In this document: one piece after another, positions 60,552 through 64,000 of the stretch
Position numbering within the stretch: position 1 is the first letter of the stretch
Layout: the number at the start of each line of letters is the position of its first letter
DNA from: Vitrella brassicaformis CCMP3155
Lineage: Eukaryota > Protista > Chromerida
Reading direction: 5' to 3'
DNA: 64,000 nt
Assembly (NCBI GenBank): GCA_001179505.1
Contig: CDMY01000462.1
Location: forward strand, 7,852-71,851
Notes under the pieces: generated by a model
Databases searched by the model: none
Told to the model about the DNA's origin: nothing
The model's input: only the letters and a program-made list of their open reading frames with translations
Position numbers and translations under genes: made by a program

Positions 60552-60877
60552 GGAGGATGCTGTATGGGTGTACTGTATGGGTGTTGGTGGGAGGGTGGTT
60601 GTCTGGCCATGTAGTAAGAACGCCCTTGCTGTCAGTGACGCTAGAGGGTTAAAATGTCACTCACTGAAAAAGACGGCACGAAACGCACAGAAAAACACAC
60701 AACGCGTTCGTTCATCCGTTCGTTCCACTACTGCAACCCGCTAACACGCACCAGCCGCTGTACAATACACCCACACACTCTACCCACCTCTAGAAAGTGC
60801 CCCAGCCCAAACACACACACATGAGGAGAGACTATCTTCCCATGCACTCCATCCACACCGCCATCTGCCCACTTCGT

Positions 60878-63659
60878 TCATCTGGCAACAGCAGCGGCAG
60901 CCGGTGCCCCAGCTGCCGTCTCGTTGCGTGGCCGCGAGGGTGCCGCCCTCCCTGGGATGGCCGGCCACTGGTCCGGCGCGTCGAAGAGCTTGCCCGTGAT
61001 GCGCCGGGTGTCGCGCAGGACCTCGCGCCAGGACGGCCTCTCTTGGTCGATGATCTTCTCTACGTAGGGGTTGACCATCATGCTGCAAGGAGAGACATCA
61101 GACACACACGCGGTGGGTGCGTGTGTGGTGTGTGTGTGGGAATGTGTGATGGTCATGTACCCACCCGTCTGGGTCCACTTTGTCCCTCAGCTGACACCAC
61201 TCGCGGAACTTGGGGTACTTGTGGTACAGATCCTGATGAATGGATGGATGGATGGATGGACGCATCGGCCAAATCCATGGTGTGCAAGGGAACCCCACCG
61301 CCCCCACACCGACCTTGTAAGTGAGCTTGTGTTCCTTGGCCCAGTGGGGGCGGCCGCCCAGCGAATCCATGATCTCCTCAAAACCCTGATGGGATGATCC
61401 GCGAATCCATCCATGCATGCAGCGGGATCCCCCTCTCTGTCTGTCTGTCTGTCTGTCCCTCTGTCTGTCTGTCTTCATGACGTGCAGTAGCACCTGGAAG
61501 TACTCGCGCCAGAAGGGGGGCGGCTCGGCGTTCCACGGCCTGGTATGTGGCAGGCAGGCAACCACACACACACGTGTCATCTCACACACGGACACTTCTG
61601 TGTGAGTCGCTCGCTCCCTCCCTCCCTCCCTCCCCCCCTCCTTCTCCCCTGTCTGGCTGACCCACCATCTCACCGACCTGTACATGATGACGCCGATCCA
61701 GCACGTGTCTTGTCCACTGCAGGGGCTGAGCCAGATGTCGTCAGCGCGGGAGAACCGCACCTCCACAGGGAAGTGCACGCCCCACTCAGGCCGGCTCTCG
61801 ATGAACTTCTTCAGACGCCGGACAGCCTCGGCGCAGTTGCCGCGGGGAATCGACCACTCGTCGACGTATTGCCTGCAGAAAGCCATCGAGCCAGTGAGAC
61901 ACCGCACAGAGAGAGAGAGAGAGAGAGGGAAGTTCCCTACCTGAAAAGGCAGTCGAAGTTGAAGACTTTGTCTGATCGGTCGACCACGTCAGACACCTGG
62001 TTGAAGGCCACCGCACGACACACCTGACATCGCCACACACGTGCACACGCACACACGCGCGCGTGTCTGGATGCTATTTCCTCTCTCCCTCTCCCTCCCT
62101 CTCTCTCTCTCTCTGTGTGTGTGTGTGTTGTGTTGTGTTGGTATACCTGGTTGACGAACTGTGCAGACGGCGGGAAGAATCTCGTGAGCCACAGCACCGT
62201 CTCCAGCACATAGTTGAAAATCAGGAACTGGTTCGCCACCCAATCGCCCTCCGACTTGTTCGGCGTCTGCACCCCACACCCACAAACACGCGCAAGAGAC
62301 CACCTTAACGTTGCTTCCATCCATCCATCGGCTCACATACGTAAATAGGAACTCGATTGGCCTTCCACTCGATGCACATGTCGGTGTGGGGGAACCACCA
62401 GAAGCGGTAGTGCTCCGCCGTCCCCACTCGCTCGTCGATGTTGCTGAGGACGTCCTCCAGAGGCACAGGCCGCTGGGAGGATCTCAGCTTGAAGGCGGGC
62501 TCGCACTTGATGGTCATCTCGGACACCACCCCCAGCGCCCCCACGTGGCACAGGGCCGCCTTGAAGATGTCGGCGTTCTGCGTCGCAGAACACTCAATCA
62601 CCTCGCCCCTACACCCACATGCACACACAGACCAACCTCCCCATTGCCGCACTCTCTCTCTCTGCGTGTGCCCATGGTCGCTGACCGAGGGGTGATCAGC
62701 TCCAGCGCCTCGATGTAATCAGACATGCACGGGAACTTCCCGCCGGTGCCGTGTATGGCGCACGCCAGAGCGCCACCCATGCTCTGCTCGCTGATGGAAC
62801 TCAGCACGGAAAGGCCCAGGTTGTGCTCAGCCAGGAACTCGTTCAGCTGTGCGAGCGTCACACCCGCCTGCACGCGAACAGTGCCCCTGCCAGACAGACA
62901 GACAGCAGTGAGGGAGGGAGAGGCGTTGGTGAGGTGCGTGTGTGGTGCATGTGAGTGGGTACTTCTGTTCGTCGACGGAGATGATTTTGTTGTAGTTGTC
63001 GGTGGAGAGCATCCGCTGCTGGCACACAGCCATCGTGTTGGGGGAGCACCCAGTGCCCACCACCTTCAGCTGAGCCATCACACACAGACAGGCACACACA
63101 CAGAGAGAGAGAGAATGAGACCGTGCCTTGTGTGTGTGTAATCTCTTTCAGCTCATCACCTTCTGGCCCTTCTCTCTGGCGTCTTTGAGTATCGCCAGGA
63201 TGTCGTCTCTGGTCTCGGGCAGGTCGAAGTACTCGGGCGTGACACGCAGCGAGTTGTGCCAGTTGGTCCAGGTCTTGATCTGAGGATTCCACCCCCAGCC
63301 CCAACGAAGCGCCTGTGATGTGACACACACACAACACGCGCGCACACACGCAAGACTGTGTCTGTCTTCCATCGATTGACGCGAATCTGTCCTTCTTTCT
63401 GCCTTTCTCACTCGCGCACCTGTCTGCTCCATCCCTCCCTGCTGGCATCTGCTGCACGCAGACCCGCAGCTCCCGTTGTCGGTGTCGATGAGGCCGGACG
63501 CACTTGCTGCCGCGGCAAAGGCGCTGCGAGGTGCACACGATGAGGGCTGATGAAGGCCGCATTGGCGCGTGCCCGCCTCAGGATGCTTGGCGCGCCGCCG
63601 CGCACAAAGGAAGCTGTGGAGAGGATGGTCATGACCAGAAGTGAGATGTGTCGCTTCAT
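60878..63659 (-). CDS. Aldonolactone oxidoreductase (GULO/ALO/GLDH family, FAD-binding PCMH + ALO domain) with bipartite leader
   Basis: MKRHISLLVMTILSTASF...ANAAF leader. WTNW, KVVGTGCSPN, VQAGVTL, SISEQSMGGALACAIHGTG, HVGALGVV, RFWWFPHTD, FNFDCLF|RQYVDEWSIP, FPVEVRF, GGRPHWAK. Confidence 0.95.
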
Positions 63660-64000
63660 GCTTGGAGGAACAGGACACGCCGGGGCAGGAATGACGGTGA
63701 AGACAGCATTCGCAAACAAAGCGGCGGGAAGGGAAGGATCGCTTTGGAGTGTGTTAAACGGGCCAGGCGTCAGCAGCCTTCTCTTCACGCACACGCGTCT
63801 GCACGTCCATCATGTCAGGATTGCCAGCTTGGTAAGACGAACCACTGCGAGCTTGTGAACTAGGGTAGATTGCTGTGTAACGGAGAGAGAGAGGAGAAGA
63901 CAAGGAAAGACAAGGAAAGCATTCTGAGGAGACACGATCTTATCAGCCATCACCGAAGTGAGATCTGTGTTGACCACCCTTCATGATGCCATACATGGAC

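What the first reader, a model, noticed from the sequence alone, without database searches (positions are those of the whole stretch)
60878..63659. Vitamin-C-type lactone oxidoreductase with Cys at the flavinylation site, Ser gatekeeper and a plastid-type leader
GULO and ALO attach FAD through the His of GHSPS, while plant GLDH has Leu (established). Here the motif is GTGCSPN, with Cys at 63046-63048. The O2-gatekeeper position (Gly in oxidases, Ala in GLDH) is Ser (LSSISEQ, 62799-62801), yet the substrate motif is the GULO-type PVEVRF. The leader (signal peptide, then ANAAF, then a basic stretch) suggests plastid import, unlike the ER or mitochondrial location of known members. It is a candidate dehydrogenase-like enzyme, possibly cysteinyl-flavinylated, making ascorbate in a secondary plastid.
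Basis: partly seen in the sequence, partly recalled or inferred. Interest (0 to 1): 0.72.

Follow-up and report, generated by a model that had tools for sequence, protein, structure and literature searches.

The report
Vitamin-C enzyme lacking oxidase hallmark residues
This expressed gene of the alga Vitrella brassicaformis encodes the last enzyme of vitamin C synthesis. In this alga and four relatives of the malaria-parasite lineage, the two residues that make the animal enzyme a peroxide-producing oxidase have been replaced, so it probably makes vitamin C without making peroxide.

Summary
A 12-exon gene on the minus strand (60878-63659, all introns GT-AG) encodes a 585-aa protein identical to GenBank CEM14989.1 of Vitrella brassicaformis. 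Spliced contigs from three runs of two studies confirm the introns. The Cys codon (63048-63046) and the Ser codon (62801-62799) show no variant letters. Cys139 aligns with the FAD-linking His of GULO/ALO (Leu56 of GalDH). Ser196 aligns with the oxygen gatekeeper (Ala113 in GalDH, Gly in oxidases).

The protein belongs to the GULO/ALO subfamily, not to GLDH. All catalytic residues are kept. The site that separates gulono- from galactono-lactone preference is Gly, as in GalDH and most non-animal GULOs.

The new result is that Cys plus Ser/Thr is fixed in a strongly supported clade: Vitrella, Chromera, Cardiosporidium, Digyalum and one unidentified eukaryote. Among 206 relatives, 188 have His and 173 have Gly.

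The most likely reading is a dehydrogenase-like enzyme that makes ascorbate without H2O2. Covalent cysteinyl-FAD is possible but untested. Plastid targeting is only weakly supported: the leader looks bipartite, but published ASAFind scores for the Chromera orthologue fall below the plastid threshold. I found no paper that discusses this residue pair.

The parts
60878..63659 (-). Whole coding region of the aldonolactone oxidoreductase gene. Exons: 63659-63420, 63312-63160, 63069-62963, 62886-62686, 62608-62341, 62266-62147, 62023-61941, 61872-61678, 61539-61494, 61385-61314, 61232-61165, 61082-60878. Stop codon TGA at 60880-60878.
   Evidence: GT-AG at all introns, open 585-codon frame. (spliced contigs in X8, X9, X11). 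(identical to CEM14989.1).
63609..63659 (-). Residues 1-17: basic start (MKRH) followed by a hydrophobic stretch. Probable signal peptide, with cleavage after Ser17 exposing Phe18.
   Evidence: Hydropathy peak of 2.1 at residues 5-15. AlphaFold helix at residues 2-19. The cleavage site is inferred from the -3/-1 rule; no predictor was available.
63432..63608 (-). Residues 18-76: disordered stretch rich in Ala, Arg, Ser and Pro. The measured segment 18-85 has net charge +9. It looks like a transit peptide and has a counterpart only in Chromera. Digyalum and the SRR22729506 protein lack it.
   Evidence: composition. (pLDDT below 50 for residues 21-82). (alignment of leaders).
63286..63431 (-). 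Clade-specific Trp-rich motif W-S-x-x-A-x-R-W-[GS]-W-G-W-N (residues 77-89), split by intron 1 (63419-63313). Exon 1 therefore encodes essentially only the leader.
   Evidence: The motif is conserved in all five clade members and absent from other GULO/ALO proteins.
63046..63048 (-). Cys139 codon (TGC), within GTGCSPN. Aligns with the 8-alpha-N1-histidyl-FAD His of GULO/ALO and with Leu56 of GalDH.
   Evidence: No variant letters in DNA or spliced contigs. Invariant in 5 of 5 clade members.
62799..62801 (-). Ser196 codon (AGT), at the oxygen-gatekeeper position (Ala113 in GalDH, Gly in oxidases). The other four clade members have Thr.
   Evidence: alignment to 8qmy and to the A113G variant 8qnc..
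62686..62886 (-). Exon 4: core of the FAD_binding_4 domain.
   Evidence: PF01565, E = 3.8e-12.
61678..61872 (-). Exon 8: ALO-domain core. Holds Gln392 (= Gln344 of GalDH), Glu428 and Arg430 (= Glu386 and Arg388), and Gly451 (= Gly413 of GalDH, Asn363 of mouse GULO; codon 61694-61692).
   Evidence: PF04030, E = 6e-22..
61949..61951 (-). Cys388 codon, equivalent to the gating-loop Cys340 of GalDH.
   Evidence: Invariant in the clade.
61335..61337 (-). Lys488 codon in the HWAK motif, equivalent to the catalytic Lys456 of GalDH.
60881..61030 (-). C-terminal tail, about residues 536-585. It lies outside the conserved fold, is disordered from about residue 546, and is specific to Vitrella.
   Evidence: no counterpart in relatives. 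(pLDDT falls to 69 at residues 541-550 and to 53 or lower beyond).
63754..63813 (-). Upstream open reading frame of 19 codons in the transcribed 5' leader. A second upstream ATG at 63709 is out of frame and overlaps the main start.
   Evidence: Transcript contigs reach 63838-63863.

Best explanation
This is the Vitrella brassicaformis orthologue of the gene that Wheeler et al. 2015 called the chromerid 'GULO'. It is an expressed, catalytically intact FAD enzyme of the GULO/ALO (sugar-1,4-lactone oxidase) subfamily.

It most likely oxidises L-galactono- and/or L-gulono-1,4-lactone at C2 by hydride transfer to FAD N5. The substrate alkoxide would be held by Arg430 and Lys488, and the product tautomerises to ascorbate.

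In this protein and its orthologues in Chromera, Cardiosporidium, Digyalum and one unidentified eukaryote, the two residues that define the oxidases have both been replaced. The FAD-linking His became Cys. The Gly that lets O2 reach the flavin N5-C4a edge became Ser or Thr.

I infer that the side chain at position 196 blocks O2, as Ala113 does in GalDH. The reduced flavin would then pass electrons to an acceptor other than O2, and ascorbate would be made without H2O2. FAD is most likely bound non-covalently, but the strict conservation of Cys leaves a thioether link open.

The protein probably enters the secretory route through an N-terminal signal peptide. In the two photosynthetic species an extra basic, disordered stretch follows, which may send it on to the complex plastid.

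Shown here: gene structure, expression, residues, family placement and clade conservation. Inferred: dehydrogenase behaviour, substrate, cofactor binding mode and location.
For: - Gene and transcripts. Identity to CEM14989.1.
- Family: Pfam FAD_binding_4 + ALO. TIGR01678 scores 396.9 bits over the full length, against 144.9 bits for the GLDH equivalog TIGR01676 (N-terminal half only). The Xenopus GULO control shows the same pattern.
- Catalytic residues Arg219, Cys340, Gln344, Glu386, Arg388 and Lys456 of GalDH are all kept. Their roles are given in PMC11099136.
- Fold: the AlphaFold core (residues 83-545) has pLDDT mostly above 90. The best structural matches are GalDH crystal structures, with TM-score by target 0.80-0.85.
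- Clade: the careful ML tree supports the clade at 100/99, with an internal order that follows the organisms. Pairwise identity is 41-59%, yet Cys139 is invariant and position 196 is always Ser or Thr.
- Rarity: among 206 relatives the site is His in 188, Cys in 8 and Leu in 5. The gate is Gly in 173, Ser in 16, Thr in 7 and Pro in 6. Cys never occurs together with Gly.
- Gatekeeper logic: the Ala113 methyl group blocks O2, and A113G raises oxidase turnover (kcat) 15- to 200-fold and the flavin reoxidation rate 70- to 300-fold (PMC11099136).
- Leader.
Against: - No biochemistry exists for any member of the clade.
- Ser at the gate also occurs alongside the covalent His in other lineages (a coral GULO and the P0136 cluster), and nobody has shown that those enzymes are dehydrogenases.
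- A Ser or Thr hydroxyl could behave differently from the Ala methyl group.
- PMC11099136 notes that other residues around the flavin also shape O2 reactivity.
- The clade includes non-photosynthetic parasites, so any link to photoprotection holds only if the change arose in a photosynthetic ancestor.
- No electron acceptor is identified. Cytochrome c is not available in the ER or the plastid stroma.
- TIGR01678 is passed by only 0.1 bit.
- GLDH sequences could not be included in my tree.
Confidence: 0.55

Rival explanations
1. The conserved Cys139 forms an 8-alpha-S-cysteinyl-FAD thioether. The enzyme would then be a covalent flavoprotein with a linkage type not yet described in the VAO fold. 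This concerns cofactor binding only and is compatible with either oxidase or dehydrogenase behaviour.
For: Cys sits exactly where the flavinylating His sits, in an otherwise unchanged G-x-G-[H/C]-S-P-N loop. It is invariant across five lineages that share only 41-59% identity. Lineages that simply lost the His mostly carry Leu instead: GalDH, P0026, P0041, P0084, and the ascidian and Smittium proteins. Cysteine is a known nucleophile for the flavin 8-alpha carbon in other flavoprotein families (PMC12149734).
Against: The VAO-family linkages described are 8-alpha-histidyl, 8-alpha-tyrosyl and 6-S-cysteinyl, not 8-alpha-S-cysteinyl (PMC6017366). In pyranose 2-oxidase, H158C gave no covalent flavin (PMC12149734). 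The Cys side chain is shorter than that of His. From memory, unchecked: a His-to-Cys mutant of 6-hydroxy-D-nicotine oxidase bound FAD non-covalently. No structure with FAD was modelled here.
Confidence: 0.3
2. It is an ordinary H2O2-producing lactone oxidase of the ER or secretory route with non-covalent FAD. The Cys and Ser/Thr changes would be tolerated drift without functional consequence.
For: Family placement in the GULO/ALO subfamily. An N-terminal signal-like helix. Fussy et al. 2019 list Cvel_9992 among secretory reference proteins. His + Ser combinations exist elsewhere.
Against: Both hallmark residues changed together, and both are fixed in five divergent lineages. Any side chain larger than Gly at this position should clash with the O2/water site seen in the A113G structure.
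Confidence: 0.2
3. It is a mitochondrial enzyme that feeds electrons to cytochrome c, taking the role GLDH plays in plants. This would matter in chromerids, which lack complex I.
For: An L-galactono-1,4-lactone dehydrogenase is drawn as a cytochrome c reductant in the related Amoebophrya (PMC7789003). From memory, in the chromerid respiratory-chain scheme of Flegontov et al. 2015 as well, but that paper was not held. The gatekeeper change fits a dehydrogenase.
Against: The N-terminus starts with a hydrophobic helix and the basic region comes after it. That order is the reverse of a matrix presequence followed by a sorting signal. The Chromera leader is a classical long signal peptide. Wheeler et al. 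state that dinoflagellates have a true GLDH, so the Amoebophrya enzyme may be a different protein.
Confidence: 0.15
4. The Cys codon or the gene model is an assembly or annotation artefact, or the gene is a pseudogene.
For: None found.
Against: The letters are identical in DNA contigs and in spliced contigs from three different studies. The frame is open, the catalytic residues are intact, and the same Cys is present in four other species.
Confidence: 0.01

Closest known systems
Animal L-gulono-1,4-lactone oxidase (GULO) and fungal D-arabinono-1,4-lactone oxidase (ALO); TIGR01678, Pfam FAD_binding_4 + ALO
   Same: Same subfamily by profile score and by tree. Same two-domain architecture. Same HFPVEVRF and GGRPHWAK motifs and the same catalytic Glu/Arg/Lys. 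About 40% identity.
   Different: His changed to Cys at the covalent FAD site, and Gly changed to Ser at the O2 gate. Animals have Asn at the substrate-selectivity site, whereas here it is Gly. The window protein adds an 82-residue leader, a Trp-rich N-terminal motif and a disordered C-terminal tail.
Plant L-galactono-1,4-lactone dehydrogenase (GLDH/GalDH; structures 8qmy and 7sml; TIGR01676)
   Same: Lacks the flavinylating His. Has a non-Gly gatekeeper. Has Gly at position 413. Best structural match, with TM-score by target 0.80-0.85. The FAD domain aligns over 228 residues at 158 bits. It probably works the same way, making ascorbate without H2O2.
   Different: Not a member of this family: 144.9 bits against a cutoff of 458, with only the N-terminal half matching. 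It has Cys rather than Leu and Ser rather than Ala. The cap domain is of GULO type. There is no mitochondrial-type presequence. If the behaviour is the same, it arose by convergence.
GULO of basal Archaeplastida (Galdieria, Chlorokybus)
   Same: These are the next-best hits after the clade (339-303 bits, 42% identity). They come from photosynthetic organisms that kept GULO, and they have Gly at the 413 site.
   Different: They keep the canonical His + Gly pair.
Other His-less GULO-like proteins (P0026, P0041, P0084, ascidian P0276, Smittium P0294)
   Same: They lost the flavinylating His while remaining within the GULO/ALO group.
   Different: They carry Leu and keep the Gly gate. The loss of His and the closing of the gate are therefore separable events. 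Only the Cys lineages changed both.

Membership tests
GULO/ALO sugar-1,4-lactone oxidase subfamily (TIGR01678; Pfam PF01565 + PF04030) | FAD_binding_4 domain followed by an ALO domain | tested here: met
   (exon 4 matches PF01565; exons 5, 8 and 10 match PF04030). The precomputed Pfam entries agree.
GULO/ALO sugar-1,4-lactone oxidase subfamily (TIGR01678; Pfam PF01565 + PF04030) | Full-length profile score at or above the curated cutoff | tested here: met
   396.9 bits against a cutoff of 396.8, covering profile positions 4-437 of 438. This is a marginal pass. Chromera (396.2), Cardiosporidium (372.1) and P0055 (329.4) fall just below, so the clade is divergent.
GULO/ALO sugar-1,4-lactone oxidase subfamily (TIGR01678; Pfam PF01565 + PF04030) | Catalytic residues for lactone oxidation (Glu386, Arg388, Lys456, Cys340, Gln344 and Arg219 in GalDH numbering) | tested here: met
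   the alignment to 8qmy shows all of them conserved.
GULO/ALO sugar-1,4-lactone oxidase subfamily (TIGR01678; Pfam PF01565 + PF04030) | His forming the 8-alpha-N1-histidyl-FAD link | tested here: not met
   Cys139 occupies that position.
GULO/ALO sugar-1,4-lactone oxidase subfamily (TIGR01678; Pfam PF01565 + PF04030) | Gly at the O2 gate next to flavin N5-C4a | tested here: not met
   Ser196 occupies that position.
GULO/ALO sugar-1,4-lactone oxidase subfamily (TIGR01678; Pfam PF01565 + PF04030) | Uses O2 and releases H2O2 | not testable with these tools
   Requires an enzyme assay.
GLDH / GalDH (TIGR01676) | Equivalog profile score at or above the cutoff | tested here: not met
   144.9 bits against 458.25, matching only profile positions 47-276 of 541.
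GLDH / GalDH (TIGR01676) | Leu at the His site and Ala113 at the gate | tested here: not met
   Cys and Ser are found instead. Both are non-His and non-Gly, so the function may be analogous.
GLDH / GalDH (TIGR01676) | Gly413, the determinant of L-galactonolactone preference | tested here: met
   Gly451. Most non-animal GULO/ALO proteins also have Gly, so this is probably the ancestral state.
Proteins with a bipartite targeting signal for the chromerid complex plastid | N-terminal ER signal peptide | tested here: inconclusive
   Hydrophobic helix at residues 2-19 after MKRH. SignalP was not available.
Proteins with a bipartite targeting signal for the chromerid complex plastid | Phe at +1 of the cleavage site (less conserved in Vitrella; PMC6668581) | tested here: inconclusive
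   Phe18 follows T-A-S, which is a plausible -3/-1 site. The cleavage site is my inference. Chromera would expose Met after A-V-A.
Proteins with a bipartite targeting signal for the chromerid complex plastid | Transit-peptide-like stretch between the signal peptide and the mature domain | tested here: met
   About 60 residues, net charge +9, one Asp and one Glu, disordered. Present in Vitrella and Chromera only.
Proteins with a bipartite targeting signal for the chromerid complex plastid | A predictor or an experiment places it in the plastid | tested here: not met
   For the Chromera orthologue Cvel_9992, ASAFind gives 0.89, or 1.12 with the species matrix, both below the 1.4 threshold and marked 'No'. 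It is listed as a secretory reference protein. The Vitrella protein is not in that table.
8-alpha-S-cysteinyl flavoproteins | Thioether bond between Cys and the flavin 8-alpha carbon | not testable with these tools
   Only the position is shown: Cys aligns with the flavinylating His. There is no precedent in the VAO family (PMC6017366).

The most novel reading that the evidence does not exclude
The apicomplexan-chromerid clade of 'GULO' enzymes carries an 8-alpha-S-cysteinyl-FAD, a covalent linkage new to the VAO fold, and works as a dehydrogenase. In the photosynthetic chromerids it is imported into the complex plastid, so that ascorbate is made without H2O2 at the site where it is needed. 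This would be a convergent solution to the one plants reached with mitochondrial GLDH.
Probability: 0.1. Interest if true: 0.85.

Novelty: new variant of a known kind. Interest (0 to 1): 0.6.

Why it matters
Wheeler et al. 2015 proposed that photosynthetic eukaryotes replaced GULO with GLDH to stop making H2O2 while making ascorbate. They listed the chromerids as the only algae with secondary plastids that kept GULO.

If the chromerid enzyme has closed its oxygen gate and lost the oxidase-type His, the exception disappears. The same selective pressure would have been met by remodelling GULO instead of replacing it. That makes the hypothesis directly testable with one recombinant enzyme and two point mutants.

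The invariant Cys also offers a natural test of whether the VAO fold can form a thioether-linked FAD at the histidyl site.

Finally, the presence of the enzyme in Cardiosporidium and Digyalum shows that some apicomplexan-lineage parasites may still make ascorbate.

Tried and rejected
- **Reading the gene through by reference.** The 269-aa ORF that carries exon 8 reached only proteins of 148-470 aa.
- **Best hit of the exon-5 representative search.** P0013 (56% identity, His + Pro) looked like an orthologue. It sits in a compact bacterial-style operon with an epimerase and an aldo-keto reductase, and it does not join the clade. I rejected it as an orthologue.
- **A GalDH-like protein?** I considered this because exon 4 hit only GalDH in the PDB. 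I rejected it: the PDB holds no GULO or ALO, the SISEQ motif is common in GULO-type proteins, and TIGR01676 is far below its cutoff.
- **GLDH in the tree.** GLDH sequences could not be added because no protein id was available and I did not type sequences.
- **Flegontov et al. 2015.** This paper on the chromerid respiratory chain is not held, so its use of a galactonolactone dehydrogenase is cited from memory only.
- **High-copy stretch next to the gene.** An Rfam scan found nothing. The repeat search found only microsatellite-type matches.
Full report
**1. The gene**

On the minus strand between 63659 and 60878, twelve exons joined at GT-AG introns of 68-138 nt give an open frame of 585 codons. 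The translation is identical, residue for residue, to database protein P0297. That protein is GenBank CEM14989.1 / UniProt A0A0G4FM17, an 'unnamed protein product' or 'FAD-binding PCMH-type domain-containing protein' of Vitrella brassicaformis CCMP3155. This identifies the organism. Earlier notes of this scan had already named it.

Contigs of public runs were laid on 60700-64000. Runs X8, X9 and X11, which come from two studies, carry spliced contigs. Seven introns appear as joints at exactly the modelled borders, with CT..AC ends on the plus strand. The other four follow from the record coordinates. The gene is therefore transcribed and spliced as modelled. No alternative letter was reported inside the coding region. 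Exon 3, which holds the Cys codon, has 0 other letters in the spliced contig of X8 and in a DNA contig of X4, which comes from a third study.

**2. The residues**

The motif GTGCSPN carries Cys139 (TGC, 63048-63046). The motif LSSISEQ carries Ser196 (AGT, 62801-62799).

A HMMER alignment to the crystallised ancestral GalDH (8qmy) places Cys139 on Leu56, the position of the flavinylating His of GULO and ALO. It places Ser196 on Ala113. The deposited A113G variant (8qnc) shows Gly in that very column.

The same alignment shows that the residues assigned catalytic or substrate-binding roles by Boverio et al. 2024 (PMC11099136) are all kept:

| GalDH residue | Residue here |
|---|---|
| Arg219 | Arg302 |
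| Cys340 | Cys388 |
| Gln344 | Gln392 |
| Glu386 | Glu428 |
| Arg388 | Arg430 |
| Lys456 | Lys488 |

The position that Boverio et al. showed to set the preference is Gly413 in GalDH and Asn363 in mouse GULO. Here it is Gly451. Every non-animal GULO/ALO in my tree also has Gly (apart from one atypical protist protein with Thr), and all the animals have Asn. The sequence therefore gives no reason to expect a gulono-lactone preference.

**3. Family**

Pfam finds FAD_binding_4 and ALO. Against NCBIfam, the protein scores 396.9 bits over the full length of TIGR01678 (sugar-1,4-lactone oxidase; cutoff 396.8). It scores only 144.9 bits against the N-terminal half of TIGR01676 (GLDH equivalog; cutoff 458). 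Xenopus GULO and Galdieria GULO give the same pattern.

An AlphaFold model built on 70 homologues has pLDDT mostly above 90 for residues 83-545. Its best matches in the PDB are the GalDH crystal structures (TM-score by target 0.80-0.85), followed by alditol oxidases and DprE1. The PDB holds no GULO or ALO, which explains why GalDH comes first.

The protein is a divergent member of the GULO/ALO group, as Wheeler et al. 2015 (PMC4396506) concluded for the chromerid sequences.

**4. The clade**

Three searches were run: one of 1.84 billion representatives with exon 5, and two word searches, the second with a profile of the nearest relatives and the window's exons. After the window's own protein there are only four close relatives, and then a large drop in score to Galdieria:

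| Organism | Protein | State at His site / gate |
|---|---|---|
| Chromera velia | Cvel_9992 (P0299) | Cys / Thr |
| Cardiosporidium cionae (apicomplexan) | KAF8819321.1 (P0184) | Cys / Thr |
| Digyalum oweni (apicomplexan relative) | P0164, partial | Cys / Thr |
| Unidentified eukaryote, 34% GC contig from run SRR22729506 | P0055, locus L001 | Cys / Thr |

The contig details are. A careful maximum-likelihood tree was built with the two trait columns removed. It unites the five proteins at 100/99 support, with an internal order of (SRR22729506, (Digyalum, (Cardiosporidium, (Vitrella, Chromera)))) and every fork at 98 or more bootstrap.

The five share only 41-59% identity, yet all have Cys at the His site. 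Vitrella has Ser at the gate and the other four have Thr.

In 206 relatives with both motifs aligned, the site is His in 188, Cys in 8 and Leu in 5. The gate is Gly in 173, Ser in 16, Thr in 7 and Pro in 6. These rows are not independent, since the set includes isoforms and cluster members. Cys never occurs with Gly. The only Cys outside the clade is one long-branched protist protein with Pro at the gate. Lineages that merely lost the His carry Leu and keep Gly. Changing both positions is therefore a feature of this clade.

**5. How it most likely works**

Boverio et al. showed that the Ala113 methyl group touches the flavin N5-C4a edge and occupies the place of a water or O2 site. A113G raises oxidase turnover (kcat) 15- to 200-fold and the flavin reoxidation rate 70- to 300-fold. 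They also showed that the Gly/His pair marks the oxidases with covalent FAD.

Ser and Thr are larger than Ala. I therefore infer that the clade's enzymes react poorly with O2 and hand electrons to another acceptor, forming ascorbate without H2O2. This is inference, not measurement. Ser also occurs next to the covalent His in a coral GULO and in one other cluster, and neither has been characterised.

For the cofactor there are two readings:
- **Non-covalent FAD, as in GalDH (about 0.65-0.7).** In another flavoprotein family, His-to-Cys abolished the covalent bond (PMC12149734). No 8-alpha-S-cysteinyl link is described in the VAO family (PMC6017366).
- **A thioether link at the histidyl site (about 0.3).** The Cys is strictly conserved, whereas independent His losses chose Leu.

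**6. Location**

Residues 2-19 form a hydrophobic helix after MKRH. Residues 21-82 are disordered, rich in Ala, Arg, Ser and Pro, and carry a net charge of +9. Cleavage after Thr-Ala-Ser17 would expose Phe18, the residue that chromerid plastid presequences tend to show at +1, although less strictly in Vitrella (PMC6668581).

Chromera has a classical 27-residue signal peptide followed by about 40 Ser/Arg-rich residues. Digyalum and the SRR22729506 protein have a hydrophobic N-terminus followed almost at once by a clade-specific Trp-rich motif (W-S-x-x-A-x-R-W-[GS]-W-G-W-N), with no basic insert. The ancestral state therefore looks like a signal peptide or signal anchor. The transit-peptide-like insert is specific to the two phototrophs, which fits plastid routing. 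In Vitrella, intron 1 falls inside the Trp motif, so exon 1 encodes little besides the leader.

Against plastid routing, Fussy et al. 2019 list Cvel_9992 among their secretory reference proteins. Their ASAFind scores for it (0.89, or 1.12 with the species matrix) are below the 1.4 threshold. A mitochondrial role as a cytochrome c reductant has been drawn for a related enzyme in Amoebophrya (PMC7789003). From memory it was also drawn for chromerids, but here the hydrophobic part comes before the basic part, which argues against a mitochondrial presequence.

My estimates are: entry into the secretory route about 0.7, plastid as the final address about 0.3, and mitochondrion about 0.15.

**7. Novelty**

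The gene is deposited, and its family assignment was published in 2015. In the searchable library only that paper pairs gulonolactone oxidase with Vitrella, and it does not discuss residues. The 2024 structural study does not mention alveolates or cysteine.

As far as I could check, three things are new. The Cys + Ser/Thr pair is fixed in an apicomplexan-chromerid clade. The clade has its own Trp-rich N-terminal motif. [quoted passage not shown]

This is a new variant of a known kind. Its main value is that it turns the one stated exception to the 'phototrophs avoid H2O2-making GULO' hypothesis into a direct experimental test.

**8. Limits**

- No biochemistry or localisation exists for any clade member.
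- No targeting predictor could be run.
- GLDH could not be placed in my tree.
- TIGR01678 is passed by only 0.1 bit.
- The organism behind P0055 is unknown.

Noticed in passing
window 63808-64000: Contig depth jumps about 500-fold in a DNA run (about 3300 against about 6) and about 80-fold in the spliced-contig runs. Several contigs diverge at 63807. This is a high-copy repeat directly upstream of the gene's 5' leader. It has no Rfam match.
   Followed up: partly
window 63754-63813 and 63709 (minus strand): The transcribed 5' leader holds a 19-codon upstream ORF (ATGATG...TAA). It also holds a second upstream ATG that is out of frame and overlaps the main start codon. This could mean translational control or leaky scanning to Met10.
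   Followed up: no
window 63314-63318: A DNA contig of run X4 lacks 5 bases in the CA-rich end of intron 1. The AG acceptor is preserved. This is an intronic length polymorphism or an assembly difference.
   Followed up: no
window 61386-61493, 61540-61677, 62024-62146 and other introns: The introns consist largely of microsatellites (GA, CA, GACA and GGAT runs). The reads tool skipped several of them as repeats.
   Followed up: no
L002 1611-3083 and L003 81-1553: The best exon-5 hit (P0013, with His at the FAD site, Pro at the gate and Asn at the 413 site) lies in a compact bacterial-style gene row with an NAD-dependent epimerase and an aldo-keto reductase. This may be a bacterial aldonolactone or ascorbate-like pathway.
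   Followed up: partly
P0276 (Phallusia mammillata), P0294 (Smittium), P0026, P0041, P0084: Several GULO-type proteins in unrelated lineages have Leu instead of the flavinylating His but keep the Gly gate. They may be oxidases with non-covalent FAD.
   Followed up: no
P0184 (Cardiosporidium cionae) and P0164 (Digyalum oweni): [quoted passage not shown]
   Followed up: partly
window 63420 / 63312 (intron 1): Intron 1 splits the conserved Trp-rich motif, so exon 1 encodes almost only the targeting leader. This arrangement would fit acquisition of the leader as a separate exon.
   Followed up: no
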